Origin: Trichoplax adhaerens
Lineage: Eukaryota > Animalia > Placozoa
DNA length: 64,000 nucleotides
Direction of reading: 5' to 3'
Assembly (NCBI RefSeq): GCF_000150275.1
Contig: NW_002060948.1
Coordinates: 186,001-250,000 of the forward strand
The position numbers were made by a program, and so were the translations under genes. Of the stretch, positions 1 to 21,600 are shown piece by piece. The notes below the pieces were generated by a model. It did not search any database and was not told the origin of the DNA. It saw only the letters and a list, made by a program, of their open reading frames with translations. Numbering within the stretch: the first letter of the stretch is position 1; each line of letters begins with the position of its first letter.

Positions 1-39
1 TACACTTTCATTAATAGCAATATGCCATTATGATAGGCA

Positions 40-545
40 AATGTTACTAGGAAAAGTTAATTTCGGAACAATGATCTAGATTATCTTATTTTTCATAGTG
101 GTAAATTCCTATGCTTCCATTTAAGAGTTACAGAAGGATTACATATTAACATATATAGTATATATATCGTTCATATATTTGCAAATTTCACTAGCTATAT
201 TTAGAACAATGATCTAGGCTATAGTAATTCCATAGTAGTAAATTTTTACGCTTCCACTTTAAGAGTAACAGAAGGATTACTTGTTAACATACACATTGTA
301 CAAGTAAGCATGCATGCAAACTACACTAGCTATATCTAAGGTAATGATCTAGGCTATATTATTTCACATAATAAACTCTTACACATACATATAAAGAATT
401 ACGAAACGGTTACATGTTGGAATTTAAATAATTATACGCGAACTTCACTAGCTATATTTTGGGCTATGATCTAGGCTATGCTGTTTTACATAGTAAATTC
501 TTACACATCCATGTTAAGAGTTTCAGAACAATTTCATATAAATAG
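40..545. repeat. Degenerate intronic tandem repeat, about 4 copies of a ~120-140 bp unit
   Basis: The core ATGATCTAG(A/G)(T/C)TAT...TAAA(T/C)T...TAAGA(G/A)T..C.GAA recurs near 71, 209, 345 and 466. Confidence 0.75.
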
Positions 546-783
546 TATACACTGTTTACCGTACTCATCTAATTTTACCTTGCAATTATAATTACTTATT
601 CTTACAATACTGTGTATATCAGTTACTACAGATATGAACGTTACTATTATCAAGGAGCTAATATTTAAAATCCCCTATTTAAAATATATATATGCGATTA
701 TTGTGAGATATTCTTGGCATTTATGATTATAAAATTTTATTACATTAATTCTATGTTAATGCTTTCGCTCTTATAATCACAAG

Positions 784-3700
784 GTTGTTGGAGTGTTGTG
801 AGTTATTCTTTCGTTAATGAACTTCAAGTCTTCCCTTTTTCCATCAATTCTACTACTGGTAGTATTACTACTACCATGCCATTATCAAGTATATCCAACA
901 CATTCTATCAAGTCAATGCTACCGCTCAAGATTGTACAAATTTAACAGATATTGCCTTAGTGAACATTTCTATTGTCAATACCAATGATTATCCACCTGT
1001 TTTTAATTCCAGTCTCTATCGGCAACTCGTTACAAATACTCTTCCCATAGGATCATCTGTTATACAAGTCATGGCTACAGATAAAGACTTAAATCAGTTT
1101 GGAAAAGTATCTTATTCTATCTTGAATCAGACTAATTTATTTGCTATTCACTCAGCCACTGGTATAATATCCACGGCATCGAGCTTACGATTGATCGTTG
1201 AAAATATCACTCTTACTATTTTAGCACAAGATGGTGGAAGTCCACCCTTCAATACAACTGCTTTAGTCGATCTGGATATATATAATCCATGTCAAGATGT
1301 TTCTTTGTGGATTTTGCCGCCTTATAATACAACATTAGATCCATCTGTTAGTTCTGTTGGTTCGTTAGTAATAGCCATTAACGGCTCTGTTCAAGATCCA
1401 AGACAAAATCAGGCGGTAGACGAGATTATTATGTTCTATCAGATAATGGCTGGTAATAATGATGGTCTTTTTGAGATCAACGGGCAAACCGGTATCGTTC
1501 GATTGGCTAAAGATTTACAGCAATCTGATTTTGGTAAAACTAGAACTTTAACTATCTCGCTTTCCAATAATGGCAGTTGTTCTGTACCTATTACTACGAG
1601 CGATGTTAGTATTAATATTAATTATGAGATTACTACGTCCAAAAACTTTGCTTCATCAGTTCAGCTAGCATTTTCATCGCCTGAAACATCAATCTTGGAC
1701 TCCACAGTTAGCAGTGTGAAACATTCTTCCTTCAACATTCTATCCCCAGAATTATCCCTTCAATTTACTCCCACTTCCATTTCATTCGATATTGCTCTTG
1801 CATCATCGACTACACTTCAAGAATTACTTTCTTCAACACCAATTTTTTACTCCTCAGGCAATAGCATGATATATTCTTCCGATGATAGCTTATTATCAGA
1901 AACATCTTTTCAAGTTAGTTCTACATCGATAGCATCTTCCACACTCGAAATAGAAGCAATACCTTCAAGTCAAAAAATATCTTCGCTGCCATTAGCAAGC
2001 AATGCTTTAGAATCGAACTTACTTTCATCAGATCAAGACCTGGTCAGTTCTTTTAGCAAAGCAATATCATCATCATTTATTGCCAATATAGTATCATCTG
2101 TTAGCTCAAACGAATTGAACGATGTGTCTTTATCGGTTGAGATATCTTCAAAAAATCTAGAAGCTGATGAAAGTGGAACATTTGCCCCTGCTTCGGTGAT
2201 AGACGATAGCAGTCTATCTTTACAAGAACTTTCATCATCATTGCCAACACTTGGTTCAAGTTCATTAAGGCTATCATTGGAGATCTCTACGCTCCAGTCA
2301 GAAATCAAATATTCTATTTCAAGTTCGCTCTTACAGCTTGTGAGCGTAACGGTTTATAATTCATTGCAACCTGACATCCCACAAAGTGAATCTATTAATA
2401 TGAATAGCTCTACTGATGAACTTAATCTTTCCATGCTAAAGACTTCAGAATACCATCCATTGAGTGATGTGCAATCAGATTTATTTGCTAGTGAGATTAC
2501 TCACTCAGTCAAGCCTGAAAATGTCTATAATATAAGCAAAAGCAGTCAAATATTTCAAGAATCTACTCAATTACTTGATATATCAGCTTCGGCAGTGGTG
2601 GGAGAAGATACTAGTGGTATAAGTGATTTAAAGCTATCCAGGATTATATCGTCATCGCTAGACTTTTCGACCTTCAAGCCAGAAAATAAATCCTCTTTTG
2701 CAGATCAAGTTATACAGCCAGTGAGTACAAGTGCTTATAATTTATTACAATCTGAATATTTGCAAAGTGGACCTAACATCGTCAGCTCAAGTAATGAGCT
2801 CGATCTATCTATAATACAATATTCGGAAAGCTTTCAATTAAATTCTCGCTCGCAATCTGATCTATTTGTTAGCGATAATACGTCTTCAGTAGTGACTAGC
2901 TATTTTTATAGTATAAGTAATATTAGTACAACAGTTGAAGAATCTAGTCAACAACTTGATGTGTCAGCGTCGACTGCGGTGGGAGAAAGTATTGGTAGTA
3001 CAAGCGATTTAGATATATCTAGTAAAATATCGTCGTCGTCAGTCTTCTCGGTCTTTACATCTCAAATCGAATCTTCTACAGATCAAATTATACAGCCAGT
3101 AAATAAAACTGTTTATAATCCTACACAATCTAGTATTACAAGCTCAATCGGCGAGCTCGATCAATCTGTACTAAATTCAGAATATATACTGTTAAGCGAT
3201 ATTCTATCTTATCCATTGACTAGTAATATTGCTATCGATATCACATCTTCAATAGCGATTGATAATCTCTCTAGTATAAGCAATAGTAGCCAACTAGTTG
3301 AAGAATCTAGTCAACAACTTGATGTATCAGCGTCGACTGCGGTGGGAGAAAGTATTGGTAGTACAAGCGATTTAGATATATCTAGTAAAATATCGTCGTC
3401 GCCGGTCTTCTCTGTCTTTACATCTCAAATCGAATCTTCTACAGATCAAATTATACAGCCAGTAAATACAACTGATTATAATCCTACACAATCTAGTATT
3501 ACAAGCTTAATCGGCGAACTTGATCAATCTGTAGTTAAAGAATCTAGTCAACAACTTGATGTATTAGCGTCGACTGCGGTGGGAGAAAGTATTGGTAGTA
3601 CAAGCGATTTAGATATATCTAATAAAATATCGTCGTCATCAGTCTTCTCGGTCTTTACATCTCAAATCGAATCTTCTACAGATCAAATTATACAGCCAGT

Positions 3701-6700
3701 AAATACAACTGATTATAATCCTACACAATCTAGTATTACAAGCTCAATCGGCGAGCTCGATCAATCTGTACTAAATTCAGAATATATACCGTTAAGCGAT
3801 ATTCTATCTTATCCATTGACTAGTAATATTGCTATCGATATCACATCTTCAATAGCGATTGATAATCTCTCTAGTATAAGCAATAGTAGCCAACTAGTTG
3901 AAGAATCTAGTCAACAACTTGATGTGTCAGCGTCGACTGCGATGGGAGAAAGTATTGGTAGTACAAGCGATTTAGATATATCTAGTAAAATATCGTCGTC
4001 ATCGTCGGTCTTCTCGACATTTATTACTGAAATTGAATCTTCTATAGATCAAATTATACAGCCAGTAAATACAACTGATTATAATCCTACACAATCTAGT
4101 ATTACAAGCTTAATCGGCGAACTCGATCAATCTGTACTAAATTCAGAATATATACTGTTAAGCGATATTCTATCTTATCCATTGACTAGTAATATTGCTA
4201 TCGATATCACATCTTCAATAGCGATTGATAATCTCTCTAGTATAAGCAATAGTAGCCAACTAGTTGAAGAATCTAGTCAACAACTTGATGTATCAGCGTC
4301 GACTGCGATGGGAGAAAGTATTGGTAGTACAAGCGATTTAGATATATCTATTAAAATATCGTCGTCGTCGGTCTTCTCTGTCTTTACATCTCAAATCGAA
4401 TCTTCTACAGATCAAGTTATACCATCAATGAGTACACATACTAATAATTTATTACAATCTAATAGTTTTCAAGGAGGATCCAACATCATTAGCTTAACTG
4501 ATGATTTATCTATACAAAATTCAGGAAATTTTCTGTTTGATTCACTTACTATCGACAGAACGTATTCAATATTGATCGATAATTCCTACGATATCAGTAA
4601 TAGTAGTCAAATACTTAAAGAATCGAGTCATTCACTTGATATATCAGCTTCAACAGTGGTAATTGAAAGTATTGGTGGCACAAGTGATTTAGATGTCGCT
4701 ATTAACAATTCATCACCGTCAGAAATCTCGACTTTCAAGCCCCAAATCCATTCTTCTGCGATAGATCAAGTTATATTGCCAGTGAGTACAACTATTTATA
4801 GTTTATTGCAATCTAACAGTTTACAAGGTGGATCCAATATCGTTAGCTCACATTACGAGCTCAATCCATCCATGCTCGTAAGTTTAGAAAATGTTCCATT
4901 AAGTGATACTCAATCTGATTTACTTGTTAGTGATATCACATTTCCATTAGTAACTAACAATTCCTACAGTACAAGTAGAATTAATAGTAGTCAAGTATTT
5001 CAAGAATCTAGCCAAATATTTGACAGATCGACTTCGACAGTAGTAGGAGAAAAAAATAATGGTAGTTCAAGTGATTTAAATGTGGCTGTTTATAATTCAT
5101 CATCGTTAGACATCTCAACATTCAAGCCACAAATCAAATCATCTACTGCCTATCAAATCACTCTACCAGTAGCCACTACAACAACGATCATAACTAATTA
5201 TAATTCATTACAATCTGACAGATCGCAACATGAGTCTAGCATCGTTAGCATAACTCAAGACCTTCATCCATCGACATTACCTAACTACTCTCAACTAAGC
5301 GATACTCAAACTAATTTGTATTATAACTCATTACAATCTGACAGACCGCAAACTGAATTTAACGTCGTTAACATTACTGAAGACATCCATTCATCGACAC
5401 TACCTAACAACTTTCAACTAAGCGATACTCAAACTAATTTGTATTACAATTCATTACAATCTGATAGATCACAAAGTGAATCGAACATCGTTAGCATAAC
5501 TGAAGACCTTCATTCATCAACATTGCCTAGTTTAAATTACTTTCAAGTAAGCAATACTCAAACTGATTTGTATTATAATTCATTACAAACTGAGAAATCA
5601 CAAAGTGAATCTAACACCATTAGCACTGCTGCAGACCACTATCCATCAATGTTACCTAATTCAGACTACTTTCAACTAGTTGATACTCAAACTGATTCGT
5701 ATGTTAGTAACATGGAGTATTCATTTAAGACTAGCCATTTATACAGTATAAGTAAGAGCAATCAAATACTTCAAGAATCTAGTCAATCATTTGGCAGTTC
5801 GATGACGATAGTACTGGGAGAAAGTATTGGTAGAACAAGTGATTTAAGTAGGGCCATCTACAAATCATCATCGCCGGAGGTCTCGACTTTCAAGCAACAA
5901 ATCAAATCTTCTACTATGGATCAGTTTATTTCACTAGTGACCATAACACAAACGGTTAAAGCTACTTACAAAACACTACAGTCTGATATTTTACAAAGTA
6001 CATTTGATATTATTAGCTCCACTGATGAGCTAAATCCATCAATATCGCCAAGTTCAGGCAACTATCAATTACTCGTAAGTGATGCTCAATCTAATTTATT
6101 TTCCATTGATATCCAGCATTCCTTAGTGACTAATAGCTTCTATAGTAAAAGTGATAGTATTCAAACATTTAGAGAATCTAGGCCATCATTTAACGTATCG
6201 ACTTCATCAGTGATGGAAGTAAGCACTGGTACTACAAGTGATTCTGATTTAGCTACTAGCAATTCATTATCGTCAGAGATCTCGACTTCAAAGCCACAAA
6301 TCAAATCTTCTACTACAGATCAAATCATCCTGCCAGCGACCACAACTACTTATAGTGTTATGCAGTTGAATAGTTTACAAGGTGGATCTAACATTATTAG
6401 CTCAGCTGATGAACTTTACGCATCTATATTGCTAAATTCAGACAACTTCCAAGTTAGCGATATTCAATCTGATTTGCAAGTTGGTCGTATCACACACTCA
6501 CTATTAACTAGCTATTTCCATAGTACAAACAAGAATAATCAAATAGTTCAAGAATCTAGTCAATCATTTAACATATCAGCTTCATCAGTGATGGAAGAAA
6601 GTATTGGTAGTACAAGCGATTTAGATATAGCTACTAATAAATCATCATCGTCAGACATCTCGACTTCCAAGCCACAGATCAAATCTTCTTCTACAGATCA

Positions 6701-9700
6701 AATCATCCTGCCTGCGACAACAACTACGTATAATGTTATGCAATCTAATAGTCTACGAGATGAATTTAACATTATTAGCTCAGCTGATGAGTTCAACCAA
6801 TCTATATTGCAAAATTCGGAAAACTTTCAATTAAGCGATATTCAATCTAATTTACAAGTTAGTAGCATCACACACTCACTATTGACTAGCCATTTTTATA
6901 GTACAAACAAGGATAATCAAATAGTTCAAGAATCTCGTCAATCTTTGAGCATAACAGCTTCATCAGTGATGGGAGAAAATGTCGGTAGTACAAGTGGTTT
7001 AGCCATTAACAACTCATCATCGTCAGGGATCTCGACTTTCAAGTCATACTTAAAATCTTCTAATATAGATCAAGATACTCCGCCAGCAACCATGACTACT
7101 TATAATTCATTACAATCTGACATCGTTAACTCAACTGATAACCTTGATCTGTCGAGATTAGCTGATTCAAGTAACTTTCATTTAAGCGATACTCTATCTA
7201 GGTTGTATGTCAGTAGCATAGCACAATCATCTGTGATCAGAAATTCCGATAGGATAGGTAATAGTGATCAAATATTTAGAGAGTCTATTCAATCATTCGA
7301 CTTCTTGACTACGTCAGTGGTGATAGAGAATATTGGTTGGACAAGTAATTTAGGTGTAGTCATGAATAACTCATCGCCAAAAGTATCAACTTTCAAGCAA
7401 ACATTCAAATCCTTTACTACAGATCAAGTCCTTCCACCAGCAATCACCACAATTTATAATTCATGGCAATCTGATATCATTAAGTCAACTGACAGTCTTG
7501 GTTCATTGATACTGACTAATTCAAATAACTTTCAATTGAGCGATACTCAATCTAGTTTGTACCTTAGTAACATGGTGCAATCAGTGACTAGCGATTTCCA
7601 TAGCATAAGGAATAGTATCCACATATTTACAGAATCTGGTCAATCATTTGGCATATCGGCTTCATCAGTGATGGGAGAAAGTATTGGTAGCTCAACTGAT
7701 TTAGATATAGCTGTTAATAATTCATCACCGTCAGGGATCTCGACTTTCAAACAACACATGAAATCTTCGATAGATCAAGTCATTCCATCGACGGTCACGG
7801 CTGCTTATAACTTATTGCAATCTAACATCGTAAATTCAATAATTGACAATCTTGATCCATTATTTAATTCAAACAATTTTCAATTAAGCAGTACTCAATC
7901 TAGCTTTTATGTTAATAACATGGTGCAATCATCCGTGACTAGCAATTTTTACAGTATAAGTAATAATGATCTAATTTCTAGTGAATCTATTTATTCACTG
8001 GACATATCGACTTCACCAGTGATGAGAAAAAGTATTGTTAGAACAAGTAATTTAGATATCACCAATTACAATTCATCATCGCCAGAAATCTCGACTTTTA
8101 AGCCACATATAAAATCTTCTACAGATCAAGTCATTCCACTTGCAACCACAACTATTTACAATGCTAGGCAAACTAATAGTTTACAAGGTGGACTCAACAT
8201 CATTAGTTCAGTTGATGAGTCTAATCCATCCATTCTATCAAATTCAAAACACTTTCAATCAAGCTATACTCAATCTGATTTGTATATTAGTAATGTCGTG
8301 CATTCGCCAGTAACTAATAATTTATACAGTATCAATAGCAGTAAATCAATATTTAGAGAATCCATTCTGTCATTTGACATATCGACTTCATCAGTGATGA
8401 GAGAAAATATCGGTAGTACAAGCGATTTAACCATTAACAACTCGTCATCGTCTGAAATCTCTACTTCCAAGGTACTCATAAAATCTTCTGCTACAGATCA
8501 AATCATCTCGACAGCGACAACAACTACTTATAACGTAGCACAATCTGATAATTTACAAAATGGATCTAACATTGTTAGCTCAATTTATGAGCTCAATCCA
8601 TCTATTTCACCAAATTCAGACAATATTCAATTAAGCGATACTCTATCTTATTTACAGGTTAGTAGTATCACATACTCGCTAACAACTAGCAATTTCTATA
8701 GTGCAAGTAAAAACAATCCAATAGTTCAAGAATCTAGTAAATCATTTGTGATAATGACTTCATCAGTGATATGAGAGAATATCGGTAGTACAAGCGATTT
8801 AGCTATTAACAACCCGTCATCGTCTGAAATCTTTACTTCCAAGGTACACATAAAATCTTCTACTATAGATCAAACCATCTCATCATCAATCAAAACTACG
8901 TATAACACAGTGCTATCTGACAATTCACAAGGTGAATTTAGTATTATTAGTTCAATTTATGAGTTGAATCCATCTATATTACTACATTCAGACAATATTC
9001 AATTAAGCGATGCTCAATCTAATTTGTAAATTAGTACTGTTACGTATTCGTTAGCGACTAGCAATTTCTTTAGTACAAACAAGAATAATTCAGCAGTTCA
9101 AGAGTCTGATTAATCATTTGATATTCGGTTCATCATTGATCGGAGAAAATATCGGTATTACAAGCAATTTAACCACTAAAAACTCATCATTAAGGATTTC
9201 AACTTTCAAGACATAAATTAAATCTTCTAGAACAGATCAAATTTTCCCTTCAGCGATTATAATTGCTTATAATACAATAAAATCCGATAATTTACAAAGT
9301 AGATCTAGCTTCAGTAGTTTATCTGTTAAGCTCAATCCATCTATATTGCCAAATTCAGACAGCTTTCAATTAAGCGATTCTCAATCTGACTCACAAGATA
9401 GTGATATTGTGCACACATTAACGACTAGCGATTTCTATAGTATAAGCAGAATCAAATAATTCAAGAATCTAGTTAATAATTTGACATATTGACTTCATCA
9501 GTGATAGGAGAAAATACTGGTAGTACAAACGATTTAGCCATTAATATCTCATCACCGTTAGAGATCTCGACTATTAAGCTACATATAAAATCTTCTACTA
9601 CAGATCAATCAATTCATCTCGCCAGCAACTACAAACACTTATAGCATAGTACAATCTGACAATTTACAAAATGGACCCAATATCATTAGGTCGACCGCCA

Positions 9701-12700
9701 AGCTCAACCCATCTACTTGTATTAGAGAACCAAATCTATTTCTTTCATCTAGCATTGAATTCTTTACAACTTGACTTGTTAGCAAGTTTGACGGATAAAT
9801 ATGCTATTGCAATACTCTCTAGCCAATTACTGTCAGTTTCTACTTCTGTAATCCTTCGCGAATTTATCGACGGTATGACTACTTATGACATCACTCTTAG
9901 CGATAGAATTGTAGCATCAGCAGTTTATCACTCAAATATATTTATAGCACAACATTCACTATAGAAAATCAAAATTTTAATCCCAGATCTTCCTTTAGCT
10001 TGCAATACAAGCTATTTCTGTTCGGGCTGTTTCGGTTTCCTATACTTCAGTAATAGCTAGCGATATTTTAGTATCAGACAAACAGTATTTATCGATAGGA
10101 TCATCGCATTTAACTACGTCTAGCGGCATAGCTAAGTCATTATCATTTATAAATCAATCTAGTCTTCAATTAACTATGATTTAAGATAAAAATTCTATCT
10201 AAAACACTAATTCTTCAACTCTATTTCAGTCTATTCCATCCGGGGTGACTTCATCCATCGATATTGCCGCGACTCAAGCGGATACAACAGCACCCTATAT
10301 ATCTTCGCTGGATGCAAGTACAAATAGCAACATGGGGCAAAAATCAACTGGCTATTCGATGATATCTCCTCAATTAGAATCCTCTACAGATTTATACACA
10401 CATATAGGGGAAACAAGCGATCAGCTTTCTACAACATACTTCATCCCTACGGAAGGAATAGGATATAGCTTAAGCGATGGATTTACATTTGTAACCGTAG
10501 CTAGTAGCCAAAATCGTAACCCAATTAGCATATCGAATACTAATAGTGAGCAAAATTCAATCGAATATCCAACGATATCTCTTCTATCACAATCATCTGC
10601 GAATTTACAAACATTTACTGGAAAGATAAGCAATCAGCTTTCTACAACATACTCCAGCTCTGCAGAAGGATTAGGATATAGCTTAAGCGATGGATTTACA
10701 TTTGTAACCGTAGCTAGTAGCCAAAATCGTAACCCAATTAGCATATCGAATACTAATAGTGAGCAAAATTCAATCGAATATCCAACGATATCTCTTCTAT
10801 CACAATCATCTGCGAATTTACAAACATTTACTGGAAAGACAAGCAATCAGCTTTCTACAACATACTCCAGCTCTGCAGAAGGATTAGGATATAGCTTAAG
10901 CGATGGATTTACATTTGTAACCGTGGCTAGTAGCCAAAATCGTAACCCAATTAGCAAATCGAATACTAATAGTGAGCAAAATTCAATCGAATATCCAACG
11001 ATATCTCTTCTATCACAATCATCTGCGAATTTACAAACATTTACTGGAAAGACAAGCAATCAGCTTTCTACAACATACTCCAGCTCTGCAGAAGGATTAG
11101 GATATAGCTTAAGCGATGGATTTACATTTGTAACCGTAGCTAGTAGCCAAAATCGTAACCCAATTAGCATATCGAATACTAATAGTGAGCAAAATTCAAT
11201 CGAATATCCAACTATATCTCTTCTATCACAATCATCTGCGAATTTACAAACATTTACTGGAAAGACAAGCAATCAGCTTTCTACAACATACTCCAGCTCT
11301 GCAGAAGGATTAGGATATAGCTTAAGCGATGGATTTACATTTGTAACCGTAGCTAGTAGCCAAAATCGTAACCCAATTAGCATATCGAATACTAATAGTG
11401 AGCAAAATTCAATCGAATATCCAACGATATCTCTTCTATCACAATCATCTGCGAATTTACAAACATTTACTGGAAAGACAAGCAATCAGCTTTCTACAAC
11501 ATACTCCAGCTCTGCAGAAGGATTAGGATATAGCTTAAGCGATGGATTTACATTTGTAACCGTAGCTAGTAGCCAAAATCGTAACCCAATTAGCATATCG
11601 AATACTAATAGTGAGCAAAATTCAATCGAATATCCAACTATATCTCTTCTATCACAATCATCTGCGAATTTACAAACATTTACTGGAAAGACAAGCAATC
11701 AGCTTTCTACAACATACTCCAGCTCTGCAGAAGGATTAGGATATAGCTCAAGCGAGGAAACTGTATTCCTAACAGTAACCAGTAGCCAAAACCGTTATTC
11801 AACTAGCGCGTTATTCAGTATAATGGATTCGCATTCAGTAAACTCATTTTTGATACCTGAGCAAACTGGCTCAACAGCAATACAGGAGATATTAACATCT
11901 ACAAAGAATGCACTACTAAATCCAACCGATAGCGGCAGCATCTATACTTCTATACTAAGTGTAAAATCAATTCCAACGTTATCTTCTACCTCAAGTCCCT
12001 CTATATCTGTTCATACTTTAAATGATCAATTCACAATTGATTATGCTAGCTCGATTGAGGCTACTTCTGCTACTCCCAACTACTTTCATGATTCATCATC
12101 AGCCTTTAACAATAGCCAAACGACTATTTATCCGACAAATTCAACATTAGTCACACCATCTGTTATTAATACTACTTCAATAGCAATCACGATTGAATTA
12201 CCAGCTACCTTTAACGCTAATAATATTCAGCTTATAGTCATCCTATGCTCAGGTACTTCCAATAATCCATCGCAAAATCAACCATGTCAAGGCACGAATA
12301 TTTCGACGACTGTGCAATTTCAAATCTTACCTAATCAAGTTATACAAATTAATAATTTAAATCCAAACACGGTTTACAGCATTCAAGTACGCTCTGGCCA
12401 ACATGTCACAGCATGGCTAGTTCGTAGAACATTAGGCTCTGGTAAGTTTAAATATAGGATGATAATTTTATAAGTATCAATTTCGCTCAATATACGCAAT
12501 ATACACTAAACAATGTCCTGTGTTTTGTGACATAATCTAGCCCCAGCTGGAATTTCATTACCCACTTGGCGAGCTGATTTCAGCAGTCAATGTATCCAAT
12601 TTAACTGGACTCAGCCGCGTGAATCTGGGGACGATACGGTTTCTTATAGATTGAATATTAATGGTCTAGAAACCTCACTTTTGACTCAAAAATATTATCA

Positions 12701-15700
12701 ATATTGCAGCCAGTTCGGAGACAAAATTATTTATTATTTAACGGCTCTAAACAGGTATAGTAACAAATAGTAAGATGAAGTGGATGGTATGTTCGAATAT
12801 TTAAAATGTTGAAGTATTCTAGTTTTCATTTAAACGGCTCTATAAGGATAAGAAGGTTAATGCTTAAGTTGAAATTTTTTCTCCATTTTTCTTACTGATT
12901 TCTATTCACAGATTTGGTAATACTGATAGTTCCATCGCCATAATTTATATTCCAGGTCAGTATTATCGTACATGAACGATTAGTAAACAGCATCAATTAT
13001 ATTAGCATACGTCCTTATTTATAATGGTATAATGGATAAAAAGTATCATAATGAGTAAAAGTTTTTGTTTCGTAAGCATAAAGAAAGATTATAAAGCGTG
13101 TATAGATTGAATTTACAGCATTGTAATAAATTCTTGCTTGGTCATAATATACGGTACCCACAGAAAAGTTGCATGAATAATGATTACGATTCTACAATAA
13201 ATTTTAGCAAAGTACAAAACTGTAATAACATTCGTCGTAATTTTCTTACCGTAAAATGCGTAGAACTAAACCAATAAATACATTACTATATAGTTTATGT
13301 AGATAGTAGTAAGGTATTAACAACTTTAATAATTAATTTGTAAAAACATTTCCAATAATAATCCTGATAGTAGATTAAGGATACGTATTGTTTATTATAA
13401 TACGTATAATTTCTAACAGTATCATTCCATAAGCATAGAGGACTAGACGGCGATAATTTTATCTTGATAAACATAATCTATATTGGACCTTTTGACACAA
13501 CATTAACTGTCTTATTAATATCTCGATATAGCTGTAACTAATGCCTCTAGGGTATAATCCAACTTTAACTTAGTTTTTATCGTTATAAATCTATTCATTC
13601 CAATAGGTCTTAGTATAATAACATTTAGTAGTAATCCTACATCAACGTTTCTATAAAGGAATTTACATCACTAATCTTACAGATTTCAGTAAGGCTATAA
13701 AACATTATTATCAAACCTTTATAGGGTTTAAAATCAAAGATATCTCATTTTTTCTCTCTCTTTAGTATAAGTAAATCGAATTATTTTTGATTCCTTCTTA
13801 TTGTCCATAATATGCATACAGGCTCATTCACTGAATACACATAAACAAAAGTCTCCCTTATTTCCCTGACATAAGTTATCATAACCGTCTTTAATATAAC
13901 ATTATTTATTTAGTTTCTACGGCAATTAATTATTTAAAACTAATCAATGTAAATCACTTTGTAAGTAATAATCATAACAAAGATTGTATATCAGCCATGA
14001 ATAATATTGTAAAACTCTCATTATGGTTTCGATCCTTGTCTTGACACTTCTTCGTAAAAGTGCTAATATTTACTGCGAATCTATGGTTACGGTAGTTTAT
14101 CCTTTCTAGCGTATATTAACCACCTGAATAGGATCATGAATTTTAAGATACAATTTCGTAACAGCGTTTACTATTGACAATATGTTCTATCAATATGTTC
14201 CAAACTCATTACGGCCAACAATATCTAGACAAATTTTCAATATTTATCTTAATTTACAAGTGCAATACGTCGTGGATCATTTACAATAATCTAATCACCC
14301 ATATCGAGCAGTGCATTAATTTATACATGTGCCAATATTGAGTAGGCATGGAAAAACTTTACTTGAAAACATTCGTTTTTAGTTACCATTTAAACTTCGC
14401 CCAAGTGTGCCATGTACTAATTTGTTAATTATTAACTGTAAATACACAACATATATAACTTGTTAGTTATCAAGTATACGTTACCTAAACTCAGGGCTCT
14501 GATCGATTTTATATAAAAGGTTAAGTATACAATAGAGCATTTTTTGTACGTAGATATATCATTAATACTTTTGAAAAGGCTTGTACGCTTGCTTCTAGAC
14601 TTTATTAATATCACTGACGGAATATTTGCTTTGACATTAAGCGCTACGAATAGTACGCTAAAATCAATTTAAAATACGCATATTAGCAATTTGCCATACA
14701 CACCACGGTTATATCACTAGGATACATAAAAACATTTTCAAATGTTTGTTTTTGGCATTGGAATGCCATTGATGGTACTGATTCATTATAACCATTCATT
14801 CAACCTCGATCGAATTTTTCGTTAACAACTTTTTGCTATAGTTACAATAATACAAAAGTTCTGGAAATACGCTAGAGAACAATCAACATTTTGGTTCTAT
14901 TCATGTATCACCGTTTCACAAATCATTGCCTAGCCATAATAGTAAAAGCGTTCCATCCGTTCATTTTTCTACCCAATTAGAGCTCTAATCTGTCGCTCAG
15001 TATATATTTATAATCATCGTTATCAATCGTGGATTACGGCCATACCAGGCTTCAAGTACGGTATAAACTATAGAGCTATAAACGCTTTCTTATTCATAGA
15101 CTAATATAGAAAGCAATGATTGTCACGTTTTCAAGTTATCTTGTTGTCATTAATTCCATAAAAGTTTAATTTTTATATACATCATACATGTTATAATTAT
15201 GTATTTCGTTATAATATAAACAAACATAACACCATTTCCGCTATCTTATCATGTCCTATTAATTTAATATTGAACTAACACTTCTATGACGTTCACTACG
15301 GTGCTTTTTGAATACTTCTATTTTTATCCTCTTATTGTAATAATTTGAATCTTTTATGAGTGTAGAGAATCAACTAATTCTTGAAAATTGTGTTTATCTC
15401 GCATTTATTAACCTTCACCTTTTCTCATATCGTGTGAAATAGTATAGTAATTTAGGAAGATAACGTCACAAGTTAAATGATGGCAATCGTGTTGATGCAA
15501 AAATGTATTTACAACATTTAAATTTATCAACAACAAAATTGGGTGTAGCAAAATGAAATTAAATTTGATTTAAATGACGACATAATATGAATGATGACAG
15601 AATGTGAACTCTATGAATCGATTTTATACATTGACTCAGTTAATAAATTGATCAATGATGATGTATCACGAGATTGATTGAATTAATCCTATGTTCTATT

Positions 15701-17143
15701 TAAATTGATTAGCTTCAGCGTCCTTCCAACCCAGGCTAATTTCATCCAATACTAGCTGTGGGTATATAGGTTGGCCAACTCTTCAACAACCCAGTGATAC
15801 TAGCAATCAAGGCGTGTACTACCAATTAATAGATCCTACTAGGGGTCAAGTCCGTTATAACGGCACCATGACAACTACAGTGCTATGCATCGACAACAGA
15901 CGTAATGCCGCTATTTTCAACTTGCAATTAATTGCTATACTGACGTAAGTTGCATCATGAATAATTCATAACTACATTCTAGTAAGAATGCAACAATATT
16001 ATAACAATGCTATTTTGAATAGTGAATAAACTACGTAATGATAGAACAAGAATATGCTTATAATGATATTTCGTTCATGAATAATCGACCTAAGAATTGT
16101 GTAAAATCAACAATACGTTAATCTGATCGTCGATGAAAGCATAACAATGAATTAATAGTTGAATTTTTAATTATGATATGTTATCGATTGGCCACAGTAA
16201 CGGAGTATTTATAAGCAACACGACAAGCTTTCAGCTAGCAGAAACAGTTGCAGCGCTTGCTGTGTTGACAACGCTTGAAATTGCTGGAATTGTATGTGGT
16301 ATTCTTTTACTCCTTGTCATGGCTGTATGTGCAGTATACGTTTATCGTAAGATCCACTTAAATCATCAAATCAACCAACCACTTTCTACACGTAAACTTT
16401 ATGTTGATGTAAGTATCATTAGTAAGATAACACAATTAATTTATTATTTGATGCAATGATAATATTGGGTAGATAATGTAGTGGTGTATGATAGCCAAAG
16501 CTATTCATCTAGTGGATAAGTTAATATCGTATTATTGAATTTATTTCGGGTAGGATATTCCATTGGTTGAGGCACAAGAAACGGCTATTAATTTCTCACT
16601 ATTTTCCCATCGAGCTCGGAGTAACAATGTATCATTAGAGCCGATTAAAGAAAGTGGAGAAGATATCGGTCCGACTGAATATGGTAGTGATGATAACGAT
16701 ATTGATGAAAATAGTGATTCTTTTGATACACCTCCAGAAGTTGTGGAAGAAATTATTGCTCCAGTCTCTAGTAATCGAAATAGTCAACCACCCAGTCGTT
16801 CAGCATCTATAGGATCCAAGTTATCAAAAAAAAGTGTAAATTTCAATGTAAGGCTATATTGTAATATTAATCCTATTATGGATCATCTTTCAATTTTATC
16901 TTAACTTAATATCGTTTCATTTTCCTATAGGAGGAAATAAGAGGTAACGTTACAGTCACTACTGTAGAAATGAATGGTGAACTTTACGAAATCCATGAAG
17001 GAGAATTTTCCTTTGATCCAAATTGTTCAAATGGAGATGATAACATCGTTGGAAGGCCAAGAAGTAGCTCCATCATCATTGATGATATGCCTCCGACTTT
17101 GTTGCAATCTTCTAAATCGGCAACAGAAACATCTCCAACTTAA
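784..17143 (+). CDS. Giant cadherin-related mucin-like single-pass membrane protein, 5'-partial. Inferred exons 784-8657, 10230-12441, 12541-12754, 12912-12955, 15713-15944, 16198-16408, 16554-16847, 16931-17143
   Basis: Cadherin motifs NTNDYPPVF, VMATDKD, GKVSYSI, LFAIHSATGII, AQDGGSPP, GLFEINGQTGIV; long Ser/Thr repeats; FN3-like segments (NNLNPNTVYSIQV, IQFNWTQP..VSYRL, YIGWP..VYYQL); TM IAGIVCGILLLLVMAVCAVYVY followed by RK. All introns are GT-AG with compatible phases. The first exon opens in phase 1 after AG at 782-783, so upstream exons lie outside the window. Confidence 0.8.
2300..9720 (+). repeat. Coding tandem array of ~120-aa (~360 nt) Ser/Thr-rich units. Near-identical copies at 2941-4410; ~41-43-aa sub-repeats at ~5200-5700; decayed copies beyond 8774
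   Basis: AATCTAGTCAACAACTTGAT starts at 2941, 3304, 3541, 3904 and 4270 (spacings 363, 237, 363, 366). The motifs ESSQ.FDIS.S.V.GE.IGSTSDL and STFKP.IKSS.DQ recur throughout. Confidence 0.9.
10421..11760 (+). repeat. Six near-identical 213-bp (71-aa) coding tandem repeats plus a partial seventh
   Basis: The unit NQLSTTYSSSAEGLGYSLSDGFTFVTVASSQNRNPISISNTNSEQNSIEYPTISLLSQSSANLQTFTGKTS has a period of exactly 213 nt. Confidence 0.97.
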
Positions 17144-17760
17144 TCACCGACGGCCTCACCAATACTTGTGTCGCCAGTATCGTCATCAACATCGTCGTCG
17201 CCATCCAACTCACCACCATCATCTCCAGTCACCAAGCCCTTACCAGAGTTTCAACCATGATCGGCAACATCTGCATCGTCATCCATTAATGAAGATTTAT
17301 CCAAGTCACAAATTTCATCAGAGAAGATATCTTCATCACAATCACCAACTTCGGTATTGGAAGGTAAAGATTTACCTGAGTCTCCATCTCAATTATAAAA
17401 GATATCGTCAATGCAATCATCATCACTTACCCAAGAAGATATATCATTATCTTTGCCAAGGCCGACATCAAATCTTCCAGAGCCACCTTCTTCTTCAGTG
17501 GAAGCGATATTACCATCTCCACTACCATCACCGACTATGCGATCAATACCACAGCCACCCTCTCCATCAGCATCATTGCAACATTGCCATTATCAGAGTC
17601 ACCTTCATCAAATAATAAGACTGTAGAAACTACTTCGGAATCACCTACTGAATCGACAGATTCTGCATTATCGTCTGCGCCTTTGTTACAACATCAATCT
17701 GCATCCGAATAATCTTCTCTTCCTGCTTTGCCGTTACTATCTTCAGAGATATACATGACT

Positions 17761-17860
17761 ATATAATGAGAAAAATGGTTTATATCAGAATTGCTTATAA
17801 TGAGAAAAATGTATATAATATAATAATATAATGAGAAAAATGGTTTACGCCACAATTGCT
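17761..17860. repeat. Short direct repeat TATAATGAGAAAAATG x3 in the 3' region
   Basis: Copies near 17762, 17796 and 17828. Confidence 0.7.
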
Positions 17861-18669
17861 TACATCAATATCTTTATCTAGAGCAAAATGTATGCATACT
17901 AATTAAAAAATTTTCATTCTAGAGTTACCTAAGGCAAATTTTAAAAAATTAATCATTATCGTTTGTTAATGTAAATTATATTTCACTGCCTGACTTCAGG
18001 TGATTGTTGTTACTAAAGAATATGGAGTTCTATAAACAGAAATTTTTCACTCGGACTAGGATAAACTCATTAACTATAAGTTAATTGAAAGATTATCGAC
18101 TTAGTATTTCTTTATAAGATTTATTAGCCATATACGATTAGAAAATACCGTAGAATAAAATCAGAAAATAATTTTCTGAGATTTCTTAAGACCCGTTCAA
18201 CTAAAAATTGTATAAAGTATAGTAGGAATTTTATAAAATATGAAGTATAATGAGAAAAAATAAAATTTCAAGTTATGTTACTTCTTCTTTCATAATATAG
18301 TACTGTATTGCCAATTAATTATATGAAATATTTATTATCTGTTTACAAATTCTATAAGAATAGCTTAAAATTTCAGCATGAACGTCTTGTTTCGTTGTCC
18401 AAGGCTAAATCACCTTAAATCATTTTAAATGTTAAAATATTCAACCGTGTGTCTACTATGTCTAATTGTAAATTGAGATGGATCTGATGTATCTTTTTAC
18501 TGCTTATTGCTTTCTAATTTAACCAAATATCATTATAATTTGCTAACAAGTACAAAAAATTGAAAGTTTTATTGTCATTTTTAAACAACTGTTAGAGAAA
18601 AAATTATTGAATTAATAAATTAAGTCAATCGTTATTACCAAAAGTAATACCTTGTCAATGCGTATTCAT

Positions 18670-21600
18670 ATAGTGACGACCACCTATCTTGCAGTAGATT
18701 GCAGCCGTAATCTAACATCTGATTTAGTATAGATGCTGGAATACAGTACCCTGATCAATCTGATGACTTTTGGTCTAAACAGTGAAGAGAATATTACATA
18801 GTATAAATGTTTAAATATTTATCGTAATAGACTATCATCTCAATAGGTACGGTAGAGATAAAATATTCTGCTTAGTGTGTCAACATCAAAGTTTTCATTT
18901 CTATGGCTATTTCATAGAGGAGGAGTCAGCATAATTATAAGTTTTCCTCCATTAAAATATTTGGAGTCCTCAAGTAAGATTTATTCTTTAATATTAAAGA
19001 TTTGAAGTATGGCTGCAATCGTTGCATTAATTATTGTCTATCATCAGATTTGCTTTCGCAGTGACATGCTATATATAGTCAAAATCGATAATGAATTAGA
19101 ACGTTTCGATATTAATTTGCTTTAATGATCTGCATGTCTTCTAAATAAGGTAAAAGTTATAAATTTAACTTGCTAGCACTAGAATCAAAATGATAATTAT
19201 TGAATTTTATTTTATAATTTTAATCTCGTTCACACCTCCTTTTCGAGTAAAATTACAAAACTCACGTCTTAGTCACCGATGCGAACAAATTATTAAATAG
19301 AGCTTTACATTTATCTTGTATATTATTATAATTAGTAATTATAATCTTTGTAAAAAGTGGAACGTTTCAACAACTTCCATGCAGGAATTTAAAATAGCTC
19401 TACAATTAGAATGAATATTTTTACTAGCGGGAAACTTATAAACAATTTACTGAATTCAGGTAAATATGCGAACTAGAATTTATTTTATTAGAATGTAGTA
19501 TTATATACGCATAGTGCAGTACAATATAAATAGCTACAGTAGCTATGAAAATTAAGCTCTGATGCGATTGTATCTTAGAGATTTAAATTAAATAATTTCA
19601 AATTGAAATACTACTGATAGGCAAGTTGAATGTTTAAGATCATTTTTTTAGGGATTATTTATTCAACGTAGAATATATTATCAACTATTCGCGATAGCTA
19701 CAAAGATAGCATGACTTTAGACTTGCTGGTATTGTCTTTCAATAATAGTTTTAGAATATTTACAGTTAGCGTAAACTAGCATAATAACAGATGGTGAATT
19801 AATTGCTTCCAGATCTAAAAAATAAATATTAAATACTATTATTTAAATTGTTCCTTGTTTAATGTAATAAATATTGCATGAACGCTATATTGATCAAGAG
19901 AGAAAAGAATGTTAAAAATATTCCAGAAATTCAAAATTTTTCAAACAAAGAGTACTACCAAGATAGCTTGTCGATTCCAACAATTTTTGCATTCTGCCAT
20001 ACCTTTGTGAATATACTCTGGGCTATCCTTTATACAATTAAGGATTGAATTATATTGGTAATATGTTTCAAATCTGTATAATAAACAAATCTTTGATCAG
20101 AGATTCTATATTGATACTACAGAGTAGGACCCAATATTATTCTCGTTAATGTAATAATGAATACAAATCGATTCTGATAAAGATTATCTGTATCGTTTCC
20201 TAATAACAAGATTTCTATAAGAATAAAATAATGACTTAATAACATAGACTTCTGACATATATCATCCAATATAATCTAGGCTATCTCAGTAGCACCCACC
20301 TACAAGAAAAATGGATATTAGGTACGTTTTACAATGTTTACTTTTGCTCTTTCTGTAGGTAGATTTCTATTGATACCTTATAAAAACAGTGGCAGATTTT
20401 CTTGAATGCTTTGCTTACCTAGTTCTGAAGACAGGGTTCCAATTAATACGCTAATGATAGCAAGGACGTTTAGGAAATATATTTTAAAGCCAAGAATTTA
20501 CTTCTTATCACTTATTCCTTTCTATAATTAGCTATTTTTCACAAACTAAATACAATCTATGCTTCCTACAAGTGTTAACTGATATTGTATCTTTCATCTG
20601 CTAATATGTGCGTACTATATATCTATGCCGCACGAATTCTTAAATCATCTTGACTTCTCTGCTTATCGGTATACTTGTATTACAAGTCATCAAATGTTAT
20701 AACAGAAGTATTTCAGTTATTTTCATCATAATCCATATTCTTAGTCGAGCCTTCGATAATTCATTAAGTTAGTGGCTTGATCAGTTACTTCCTATAAAAG
20801 ATTTCGAAAATCATTTGTTTCGAAGACGATCACAATATCAATAATCTATTCAATAAGGTCTTCTAATGATATATTAATAGAGAATTGAAGTAGATAATTA
20901 AATTCATTTTATTAAGCCTTCTGTAAATCTTTATGAAAGAATCAGTAGCTTATCGAAGGTAAATGTTAATCATTTTTCTTATACCAGCACTTCCTACTAG
21001 ATCCTCTCTTGCATTAGAAGAAGTTCTTTCATCGTAAATAAATATCTGAATGAAAACTCAAATTCCTTAATGATGCCGATGCTTCCTAGTATGCCTTGCA
21101 TTAATAGTATATTAGCAGTATCACGTGTACTCTTAAGCATTATAACTATTCATCTATTTATCTAAAATTTTAGACAGTTTTCATCAAATCTACAATTCAA
21201 TCCTAGCTGTGTCTTACAGAAACAAGCAAGGTAAAATTAATACTAACAAATACAAGGGTTACATCCGCGATATGTATTTGTGTATTGAACATTAAATATT
21301 TTTAATTTACTTTGGGCCAATGAAAGAACAACTGTAAGAAGTTTTTATTTCATCCCGCACCGGATACCTTTTTTCATTTTATATCATACTGTTTATTACT
21401 TTCGCAATCTATTTTCTGTATGATTTAATTTCCCTATCTACCTGATTATCAAATTGGCCTTACACTGTATTCAGTTATTCGGATTATCTTTTTCTTTAAA
21501 TATTCAGCATATCAAGCTCCAGAAGTAATGTACGGTGATTATATGAATTTATGAGATTTGTTAAGATTTTTTATCACTATAGCACTTTGTTGCGATGACA

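What the first reader, a model, noticed from the sequence alone, without database searches (positions are those of the whole stretch)
8658..10229. Intron apparently born from the gene's own coding repeats (intronization)
Seen: the 2658-aa ORF stops at 8772, but the ~360-nt repeat continues with stops and indels to ~9720, and Ser/Thr-rich in-frame text persists to ~10180. A strong phase-0 donor CAG|GTTAGT sits at 8657/8658, whereas the homologous position in an earlier unit (~6855) is CAA GTTAGT. A phase-0 acceptor TTTCAG|TCT at 10229, with a branch-like CACTAAT ~20 nt upstream, reads in frame as NTNSSTLFQ, i.e. ex-coding. The 1572-nt intron is 3n and all lesions fall inside it. Inference: cryptic splice sites excised part of the stalk, which then decayed.
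Basis: partly seen in the sequence, partly recalled or inferred. Interest (0 to 1): 0.85.

Follow-up and report, generated by a model that had tools for sequence, protein, structure and literature searches.

The report
Decayed coding repeats inside a probable intron
In a giant Trichoplax cadherin-mucin gene, about 1.5 kb of broken copies of the gene's own coding repeat separates two long reading frames that share one frame. Strong splice signals sit at both edges, so this is probably an intron made from former coding sequence, but no RNA data could be obtained to prove the splice.

Summary
The window is Trichoplax adhaerens. ORF A (798-8774; TRIADDRAFT_57050) and ORF B (10245-12473) share one frame. 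Between them lie the tail of the last intact 372-nt repeat unit and 2.55 further units (8781-9718). These carry six stops in the units' own frames and three frameshifts.

CAG|GTTAGT at 8657|8658 is the best donor-like site of 394 GT in the whole 8-kb exon. TTTCAG| at 10229 is the first AG after the last in-frame stop.

Trichoplax sp. H2, an independent assembly 99.3% identical, shares all lesions but one, so they are not assembly errors. Between H1 and H2 the gap gains and loses stops and has a 1-nt indel. Both flanking ORFs stay open, and exon A is under constraint (dN/dS about 0.4).

ORF B belongs to a model that GenBank labels 'partial'. It starts exactly at 10230, lacks a start codon and signal peptide, and carries the only transmembrane helix. 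ORF A's gene has the only signal peptide. One gene spliced across the gap is therefore the best reading.

Public models do not contain this intron. The reading fits the known intronization model, so I call it a probable new member of a known kind. Whether the intron is wholly new or an older small intron that grew outward is open.

The parts
784..8657 (+). Giant exon A. It holds the last cadherin domains and then the Ser/Thr-rich stalk of ~350-380-nt tandem units. It is exon 10 of the H2 model RDD44919.1.
   Evidence: Exact mapping of P0003 on L018 gives exon 15532-23402, which equals window 784-8657. Pfam Cadherin E 7e-26. H1-H2 changes are 22 synonymous and 32 non-synonymous, dN/dS ~0.4, p=0.002.
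8655..8663 (+). Proposed 5' splice site CAG|GTTAGT. The intron starts at 8658, in phase 0.
   Evidence: It ranks 1 of 394 GT in 790-8774 by a matrix built from 15 introns of this locus: 9.6 bits, next best 7.7, best true donor 8.7 when left out of the matrix. It matches MAG|GTRAGT at 8 of 9 positions. Both public models use it as a donor.
8658..8780 (+). 3' third of the last otherwise intact repeat unit (unit starting at 8409). It is still open until TGA at 8772-8774.
   Evidence: Unit alignment and translation.
8781..9150 (+). Decayed repeat unit 1. It has TAA at 9027 (the very codon that is CAG at the donor of the previous unit), TAA at 9111, and a 2-nt deletion after 9121.
   Evidence: nhmmer E 7e-84, unit alignment, translations.
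9151..9515 (+). Decayed repeat unit 2. It has TAA at 9214 in its own frame, an in-frame 3-nt deletion, a 4-nt deletion after 9449, and TAA TAA at 9474-9479.
   Evidence: nhmmer E 8e-75, translations. In H2 the 9474 TAA reads AAA.
9516..9718 (+). Decayed partial repeat unit 3, with a 4-nt insertion at 9607-9610. Recognisable repeat homology ends at 9718.
   Evidence: nhmmer E 1.5e-42, profile positions 2-205 of 377.
9719..9998 (+). Core of the gap with no detectable ancestry. It overlaps a 104-codon open stretch (9653-9964) in another frame. This could be the remnant of an older, smaller intron or a fully decayed linker.
   Evidence: Local alignment to the unit consensus is no better than shuffles, P 0.2-0.8. 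The longest open stretch has P=0.017 against shuffles. H2 carries three amino-acid changes and a frameshift in that stretch.
9999..10181 (+). Fossil coding segment in the gene's own frame: 61 open codons with 31% Ser+Thr. TAA at 10182 and TAA at 10200 cut it off from exon B.
   Evidence: 0 of 5024 intron windows of this locus reach 31% S+T (mean 13.7%, maximum 26%).
10205..10229 (+). Proposed 3' splice region: branch-like CACTAAT (10205-10211), a pyrimidine-rich tract, and TTTCAG ending at 10229.
   Evidence: Sequence. It is the first AG after the last in-frame stop, in phase 0, with 75% pyrimidines in -20..-3. The H2 model TrispH2_002388 starts exactly at 10230.
10230..12441 (+). Exon B: a unique 61-aa start, then 6.3 copies of a 213-nt unit at 98% identity, then a unique Ser/Thr-rich part. 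It is followed by six more exons to 17143 that include the transmembrane helix and the cytoplasmic tail.
   Evidence: Exact mapping of P0123 on L018. The only transmembrane helix lies at residues 917-954 of P0123.
9055..9216 (+). Terminal exon of the public models (JGI TRIADDRAFT_57050 and H2 RDD44919.1). It reads decayed unit 2 in its shifted frame up to the TAA at 9214. It is probably a gene-prediction artefact or at most a minor isoform.
   Evidence: The H2 annotation used T. adhaerens UniProt proteins as evidence (PMC6057997), so the two models are not independent.

Best explanation
ORF A and ORF B are two exons of one gene. The gene encodes a single-pass surface protein: signal peptide, laminin-N-like domain, cadherin domains, a long Ser/Thr-rich repeat stalk, a juxtamembrane part, a transmembrane helix and a cytoplasmic tail.

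The 1572 nt between the exons (8658-10229) are removed as a GT-AG intron. About 1060 nt at the intron's 5' side are former stalk repeats (the tail of one unit plus 2.55 units). About 230 nt at its 3' side are former coding sequence in the gene's own frame.

The likely history is inferred, not shown. The stalk tolerates loss of whole units. One or more nonsense or frameshift mutations hit the last units. Transcripts that used a latent in-frame donor inside the preceding unit escaped the stops. That donor (GTTAGT, encoding Val-Ser) recurs in several units, and only here does a synonymous CAA-to-CAG change bring it to the consensus. The skipped sequence then decayed freely.

This is the intronization route proposed by Catania and Lynch (PMC2586383): a stop-containing exonic stretch, a latent 5' splice site, a 3n length, and a dispensable part of the protein.
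For: Shown:
- Repeat homology of 8781-9718, with nine lesions in the units' own frames.
- The same lesions in the independent H2 assembly, except the TAA at 9474, and no indel in 8658-9900.
- The gap evolves without coding constraint. Of 8 H1-H2 substitutions, 3 make stops and 1 removes a stop in the gene's frame, and there is a 1-nt indel.
- The flanks are kept open. At the gap's lesion density, about 29 lesions would be expected in the 3.4-kb coding sequence of B and about 67 in exon A; none is seen. Exon A has dN/dS ~0.4, p=0.002.
- The donor at 8658 ranks first of 394 GT and lies only 114 nt before the first stop.
- The acceptor at 10229 is the first usable AG and is phase-compatible with the donor.
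- The B model is 'partial'. It starts at 10230 with no start codon.
- The only signal-like segment is at the N-terminus of A. The only transmembrane helix is in B, followed by RK.
- No plausible start exon with a signal peptide lies in the gap.
- Introns of 1168 and 2757 nt occur in the same locus.
- 9999-10181 has exon-level Ser/Thr content in the gene's frame.

Inferred: the order of events, and the role of the CAA-to-CAG change.
Against:
- Both public annotations split the locus. They end gene A through a different junction (8657^9055) at the stop at 9214-9216. The H2 annotation had RNA-seq assemblies as evidence and still did not join A and B.
- No protein in the searched collections spans the junction.
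- The decayed units are no more diverged from the unit consensus than intact ones (77-80% against 78-84%), so relaxed constraint shows only in stops and indels.
- The small acceptor matrix does not single out 10229 (rank 34 of 95).
- 9719-9998 has no demonstrable coding ancestry.
Confidence: 0.55

Rival explanations
1. One gene and one intron here, but the intron is not new. An older, small intron lay roughly within 9719-9998. It grew outward when lesions in the flanking coding sequence forced the use of an upstream donor (8658) and a downstream acceptor (10229). This would be splice-site migration rather than intron birth.
For: - Repeat homology stops abruptly at 9718, and 9719-9998 has no detectable coding ancestry.
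- The only decent donor-like site inside the gap is at 9873 (6.8 bits, phase 0).
- A pyrimidine-rich phase-0 acceptor lies at 9998|9999, exactly where the Ser/Thr-rich fossil frame begins. The pair would give a 126-nt intron, typical for this locus (83-157 nt).
Against: - The 104-codon open stretch at 9653-9964 runs across much of that core (P=0.017), which hints at coding ancestry there too.
- Weak blastx matches of that stretch to the unit motif fall in register but have E of 1 or more.
- The frames of the supposed old donor and the upstream unit do not fit without assuming further indels.
Confidence: 0.2
2. There are two transcription units, as annotated. Gene A ends at 8772 or, after the 8657^9055 splice, at 9214-9216, and makes a secreted laminin-N/cadherin/mucin protein. 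Gene B is expressed from its own promoter or is a stranded remnant of a gene fission.
For: - The JGI and MAKER models are built this way.
- ATTAAA at 9217 and AATAAA at 9276 follow the annotated stop.
- RNA-seq-informed MAKER did not join the two models.
Against: - B has no start codon (GenBank labels it 'partial'), no signal peptide and no candidate first exon in the gap. Yet its topology (a long N-terminal part, a transmembrane helix, then RK) needs a signal peptide.
- The reading frame of B and its six introns are intact in both genomes, although the adjacent gap collected nine lesions per kb.
- A and B are in the same frame.
- The 3' end of the H2 model of A copies the JGI protein that was fed in as evidence.
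- Poly(A)-like hexamers are common in 32% GC DNA.
Confidence: 0.17
3. The whole locus, or its 3' half, is a recently dead gene. The open frames are leftovers and the splice-like sites are coincidence.
For: - Stops and frameshifts sit in the middle of a would-be coding region.
- The stalk evolves fast.
- No Pfam domain was found in B.
Against: - 2620 and 737 open codons flank the gap in DNA where stops arise about every 13 codons. The lesions predate the H1-H2 split, yet none lies outside the gap.
- There is an excess of synonymous changes in exon A (p=0.002).
- The splice sites of all 15 other introns are intact in H2.
Confidence: 0.05
4. The lesions are assembly or sequencing errors, and the region is ordinary coding sequence.
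For: Tandem repeats are error-prone in assemblies.
Against: - The Sanger assembly of H1 and the Illumina/MaSuRCA assembly of H2 (PMC6057997) agree on every frameshift and on five of the six own-frame stops.
- The units are only 66-85% alike, so they assemble unambiguously.
Confidence: 0.02

Closest known systems
Intronization of exonic sequence (Catania and Lynch 2008, PMC2586383; reviewed in PMC3443670 and PMC9612004, the last two seen by title and abstract only)
   Same: A stop-containing stretch inside a very long coding exon. A latent 5' splice site upstream of the first stop. A length that is a multiple of three in this genome. A location in a repetitive stalk whose shortening should matter little. 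Decay confined to the skipped part.
   Different: Here the skipped sequence consists of recognisable tandem copies of the neighbouring coding repeat, so its coding origin can be read directly from one genome. Splicing itself is not shown. An outgroup with the unspliced state is missing. The middle 280 nt may be an older intron.
Exitrons: 3n introns inside protein-coding exons whose retained form is coding (PMC4484396, title and abstract only)
   Same: The position inside a coding exon, the phase-0/phase-0 sites and the 3n length (in H1) fit an exitron as a possible earlier stage.
   Different: The retained form now carries 35 in-frame stops, and in H2 the length is 3n+1. At best it is a fossilised exitron.
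Intron gain by tandem duplication of an exonic AGGT segment, and intron sliding (PMC2891723, title and abstract only)
   Same: Tandemly duplicated exon sequence lies inside the intron. The donor motif recurs at the homologous place of several units (CAA|GTTAGT at 6858).
   Different: The acceptor is not in a repeat unit and is not homologous to the donor site. The homologous donor positions of the units inside the intron are mutated (ATTAGT, GATAGT). The classic duplication model therefore does not fit. Sliding of both ends remains a rival.
Public gene models TRIADDRAFT_57049/57050 (JGI) and RDD44919.1 plus TrispH2_002388 (H2)
   Same: Same locus, same donor at 8657|8658, same exon start at 10230.
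   Different: The public models end A in the decayed repeat and leave B as a start-less partial gene. The reading here joins them.

Membership tests
U2-type GT-AG spliceosomal intron | 5' site matching the local donor consensus | tested here: met
   CAG|GTTAGT scores 9.6 bits, first of 394 GT in exon A and above all 15 reference donors.
U2-type GT-AG spliceosomal intron | 3' site with a pyrimidine tract, YAG and a branch-like motif | tested here: inconclusive
   TTTCAG with 75% pyrimidines, CACTAAT 19 nt upstream, and the first AG after the last stop. But a 15-intron acceptor matrix ranks it only 34 of 95.
U2-type GT-AG spliceosomal intron | Junction present in RNA | not testable with these tools
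No transcript-derived protein of this gene is in the protein collection.
U2-type GT-AG spliceosomal intron | Removal restores one continuous reading frame | tested here: met
   Both sites are in phase 0, both ORFs are in the frame of position 798, and all stops lie between 8772 and 10202.
Intronization (exon turned into intron) | Intron sequence homologous to coding sequence | tested here: met
   8658-9718 aligns in register with intact coding units (E 1e-42 to 1e-84). 9999-10181 has exon-like composition in frame. 9719-9998 does not.
Intronization (exon turned into intron) | Flanking sequence under coding constraint, the intron itself not | tested here: met
   H1-H2 comparison: the flanks have no lesion and an excess of synonymous changes. 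The gap gains and loses stops and has an indel.
Intronization (exon turned into intron) | A related lineage keeps the stretch as uninterrupted exon | not testable with these tools
   H2 already has the decayed state. No Hoilungia or other placozoan ortholog was found.
Exitron | The retained isoform stays translatable | tested here: not met
   35 stops in frame in H1 and 38 in H2. The length is 1573 nt in H2.
Intron gain by tandem duplication (AGGT model) | Donor and acceptor are homologous sites in two copies of the duplicated segment | tested here: not met
   The acceptor at 10229 lies 511 nt beyond the last recognisable unit.

The most novel reading that the evidence does not exclude
A spliceosomal intron arose entirely inside an 11.6-kb coding exon of an early-branching animal. 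Its raw material, tandem coding repeats, is still legible. The same Val-Ser-encoding GTTAGT recurs once per 3n-long repeat unit, which gives a periodic set of in-frame latent donors. A damaged stalk could then be trimmed by whole units without loss of frame. This would be a built-in rescue route for mucin-like genes and a clean single-genome example of the stop-codon-driven intronization model.
Probability: 0.3. Interest if true: 0.6.

Novelty: new member of a known kind. Interest (0 to 1): 0.42.

Why it matters
Convincing cases of introns born from exon sequence are few. Most rest on comparing annotations between species. Here the coding origin of most of the intron can be read from the sequence itself, because the intact sister repeats sit next to it.

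If RNA confirms the junction, three things follow:
- Two public gene models, one of them a start-less 'partial' protein, become one receptor-like protein.
- Placozoans gain a documented intronization event older than the H1-H2 split.
- Repeat stalks would be seen to carry periodic latent donors that can absorb nonsense mutations.

If RNA does not confirm it, the locus is a gene fission or a dying gene, which is ordinary.

Tried and rejected
- RNA test. The look-up of sequencing runs was asked for 7200-13100. After I saw that other agents had RNA results on this genome, I asked once more for 8200-10420. Between the two refusals I had sent parts of the stretch to other search tools.
- Representative-library search with exon B: 0 hits, although the 90%-cluster search later found the H2 protein. 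The blank therefore means nothing.
- Outgroup ortholog. Searches with the C-terminal stalk and with the N-terminal 900 aa of the H2 protein found only generic FAT/dachsous-type cadherins at 24-32% identity. No Hoilungia ortholog appeared.
- The look-up of encoding contigs for the T. adhaerens protein itself gave nothing.
- Own-genome DNA search: no second copy, haplotig or retrocopy of 9714-10337 that could have shown a spliced junction.
- Paralog in the window: tblastx of 10230-17200 against the rest of the window found nothing.
- Alternative first exon for B inside the gap: no start codon followed by a hydrophobic peptide and a phase-compatible donor.
- Excess divergence of the decayed units: none.
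- Repeat ancestry of 9719-10229 at DNA level: not significant. blastx hits had E of 1 or more.
- Literature. No paper names TRIADDRAFT_57050, B3S0H5, RDD44919 or TrispH2_002387/8. The supplements of PMC6057997 do not list them. The Trichoplax proteome paper is not held.
- The joined exon A plus exon B protein was deliberately never built, searched or folded.


Full report
**Identity of the locus.** The window is G000:C1409:186001-250000 of a 105.6-Mb, 1414-contig genome. The long ORF is TRIADDRAFT_57050 of Trichoplax adhaerens (P0001, 100% identical). Its 90% cluster also holds TRIADDRAFT_57049 (P0002) and the Trichoplax sp. H2 protein RDD44919.1, 'Protocadherin-23' (P0003, 3302 aa). The H2 locus was fetched as L018. 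It aligns to window 1-19214 at 99.33% identity, and window position p corresponds to about L018 position p+14745 across the gap.

**The observation.**
- ORF A runs 798-8774 and ORF B 10245-12473. Both are in the frame of position 798.
- The stalk consists of ~350-380-nt units. The last ones start at 8034, 8409, 8781, 9151 and 9516.
- A profile of eight intact units finds 8781-9149, 9152-9514 and 9517-9718 with E-values of 7e-84, 8e-75 and 1.5e-42, and nothing beyond 9718.
- Read in each unit's own frame, there are six stops: TGA at 8772, and TAA at 9027, 9111, 9214, 9474 and 9477. There are three frameshifts: -2 after 9121, -4 after 9449 and +4 at 9607-9610.
- The TAA at 9027 hits the same codon that is CAG at the donor one unit upstream.

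**The lesions are real and old.** The H2 genome was sequenced and assembled independently (Illumina, MaSuRCA; PMC6057997). It has no indel against H1 between 8658 and 9900, and it shares every stop in the units' own frames except the TAA at 9474. The decay therefore predates the H1-H2 split, and assembly error is excluded.

**Selection.**
- Between H1 and H2 the gap has 8 substitutions. In the gene's frame three create stops and one removes a stop. There is also a 1-nt insertion near 9918, which makes the H2 gap 1573 nt.
- Exon A has 22 synonymous and 32 non-synonymous changes on 1760 and 6100 sites. That gives dN/dS of about 0.4, with an excess of synonymous changes at p=0.002.
- Exon B has 4 synonymous and 7 non-synonymous changes, which is not significant.
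- At the lesion density of the repeat-derived part (9 per 1061 nt), exon A would be expected to carry about 67 lesions and the coding sequence of B about 29. Both carry none.
- The flanks have therefore been kept open while the gap decayed.
- Nucleotide divergence does not separate decayed from intact units: 77-80% against 78-84% identity to a leave-one-out consensus. The stalk is constrained mainly for an open frame and its composition.

**Splice signals.** I mapped the two H2 proteins exactly onto L018 and obtained 15 reference introns of 83-2757 nt. A donor matrix from these ranks 8658 (cag|GTTAGTA, 9.6 bits) first among all 394 GT between 790 and 8774. It scores above every reference donor when each is left out of the matrix in turn (maximum 8.7). 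The site lies 114 nt before the first stop. The homologous sites of other units are CAA|GTTAGT (6858, 6.6 bits), CAA|GTTGGT, TAT|GTCAGT and similar. Inside the gap they have lost the GT (TAA ATTAGT, CAA GATAGT). The final G of CAG, a synonymous change, is what lifts this copy to the top.

On the 3' side, every AG from 9900 to 10186 is followed by an in-frame stop. 10229 is the first AG that opens into exon B. It is in phase 0 and follows 75% pyrimidines and a CACTAAT. My small acceptor matrix is too noisy to add anything.

**What public annotation does.** The JGI model and the H2 MAKER model both leave exon A at 8657|8658, re-enter at 9054|9055, and end at the TAA at 9214-9216 inside decayed unit 2. 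They are not independent, because MAKER was given T. adhaerens UniProt proteins as evidence (PMC6057997). The next H2 model, TrispH2_002388 (P0123, 1139 aa), is labelled 'partial'. It begins with SIPSGV, exactly at window 10230, and runs through six further introns to 17143. No T. adhaerens model contains exon B.

**Why one gene.** The H2 protein of A has one signal-like hydrophobic segment at residues 26-44 and no transmembrane helix. P0123 has no start codon and no N-terminal hydrophobic segment. It has a single strong transmembrane helix at 917-954, followed by RKIH. A protein with more than 900 residues N-terminal of its only helix and a positive C-terminal flank needs a signal peptide; this rests on general knowledge of membrane-protein topology. 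A scan of the gap for a start codon with a hydrophobic peptide and a phase-compatible donor found nothing credible. Pfam gives Laminin_N and Cadherin in A and nothing in B. The FN3-like look of the exons after 12441 is my reading by eye only.

**How much of the gap was once coding.**
- 8658-9718 (1061 nt) certainly was.
- 9999-10181 is open for 61 codons in the gene's own frame with 31% Ser+Thr, the level of exons A and B (32% and 35%). None of 5024 windows in 7.1 kb of this locus's introns exceeds 26%. Two TAA codons (10182, 10200) separate it from exon B.
- 9719-9998 has no significant similarity to the repeat. It overlaps a 104-codon open stretch in another frame (P=0.017 against shuffles) that is not conserved as coding in H2.

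At least about 80% of the gap is therefore ex-coding. The middle may be the remnant of an older small intron. A candidate pair is a donor-like site at 9873 and an acceptor-like site at 9998, which would give 126 nt. That sub-scenario is splice-site migration outward rather than intron birth, and I cannot separate the two.

**Comparison with what is known.** The pattern matches the intronization hypothesis point by point: a stop-containing exonic stretch, activation of a latent 5' splice site, a length that is a multiple of three, and a location in a protein segment of little structural consequence (PMC2586383). It is not an exitron now, because the retained form is full of stops and the H2 length is not 3n. 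It does not fit the AGGT tandem-duplication model, because the acceptor is outside the repeats. Earlier first-reader notes of this scan describe other Trichoplax introns filled with decayed copies of neighbouring exons (s1-739471, s1-753030). I did not test them.

**Limits.**
- No outgroup beyond H2 was reachable.

**Verdict.** The single-gene, intron-over-decayed-repeats reading is the best explanation, at about 0.55 for the exact sites and about 0.75 for A and B being spliced together in some way. Its origin from former coding sequence is well supported for most of its length. It is a probable new member of a known kind, of moderate interest until RNA confirms it.

Noticed in passing
window 784 and upstream; L018:10001-15531: The H2 model merges JGI models TRIADDRAFT_57049 and 57050. 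It adds nine upstream exons with a signal-like start and a Laminin_N-like domain before the cadherin domains. The JGI start 'MPLSSISN' at about window 876 is therefore internal. Laminin_N followed by cadherin domains is an unusual combination.
   Followed up: partly
window 10413-11755: Exon B holds 6.3 copies of a 213-nt (71-aa) unit at 98% identity. Six of the seven non-synonymous H1-H2 differences there toggle the same few codons (I/T/K, V/A) in different copies. This suggests ongoing gene conversion or unequal exchange rather than independent mutation.
   Followed up: no
window 4001-4045: A cluster of H1-H2 mismatches and small indels, with a net 3-nt difference, lies inside the 93-95% identical 366-nt units. 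It is probably a repeat-register or conversion difference between the two lineages or assemblies. The frame is kept.
   Followed up: no
window 67-370: A 138-nt tandem repeat (2.2 copies, 76% matches) with further related copies up to about 520 lies in the 983-nt intron upstream of the giant exon. It looks like a small dispersed or satellite-like element.
   Followed up: no
window 9653-9964; L018 equivalent: A 104-codon open stretch lies in the gap, in a frame other than the gene's. In H2 the 1-nt insertion near 9918 lengthens it to 134 codons. All three substitutions in it change the amino acid, so it is probably not coding.
   Followed up: partly
window 5197-5702: A separate 123-nt sub-repeat (about 4 copies, 80-83% matches; 'YYNSLQSD...LSDTQTNL') is embedded in the stalk between the ~370-nt units.
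   Followed up: no
tool behaviour: The every-protein HMMER search of cluster representatives returned nothing for exon B. Yet a 99% identical 1139-aa NCBI protein exists in the 90%-cluster collection.
   Followed up: partly
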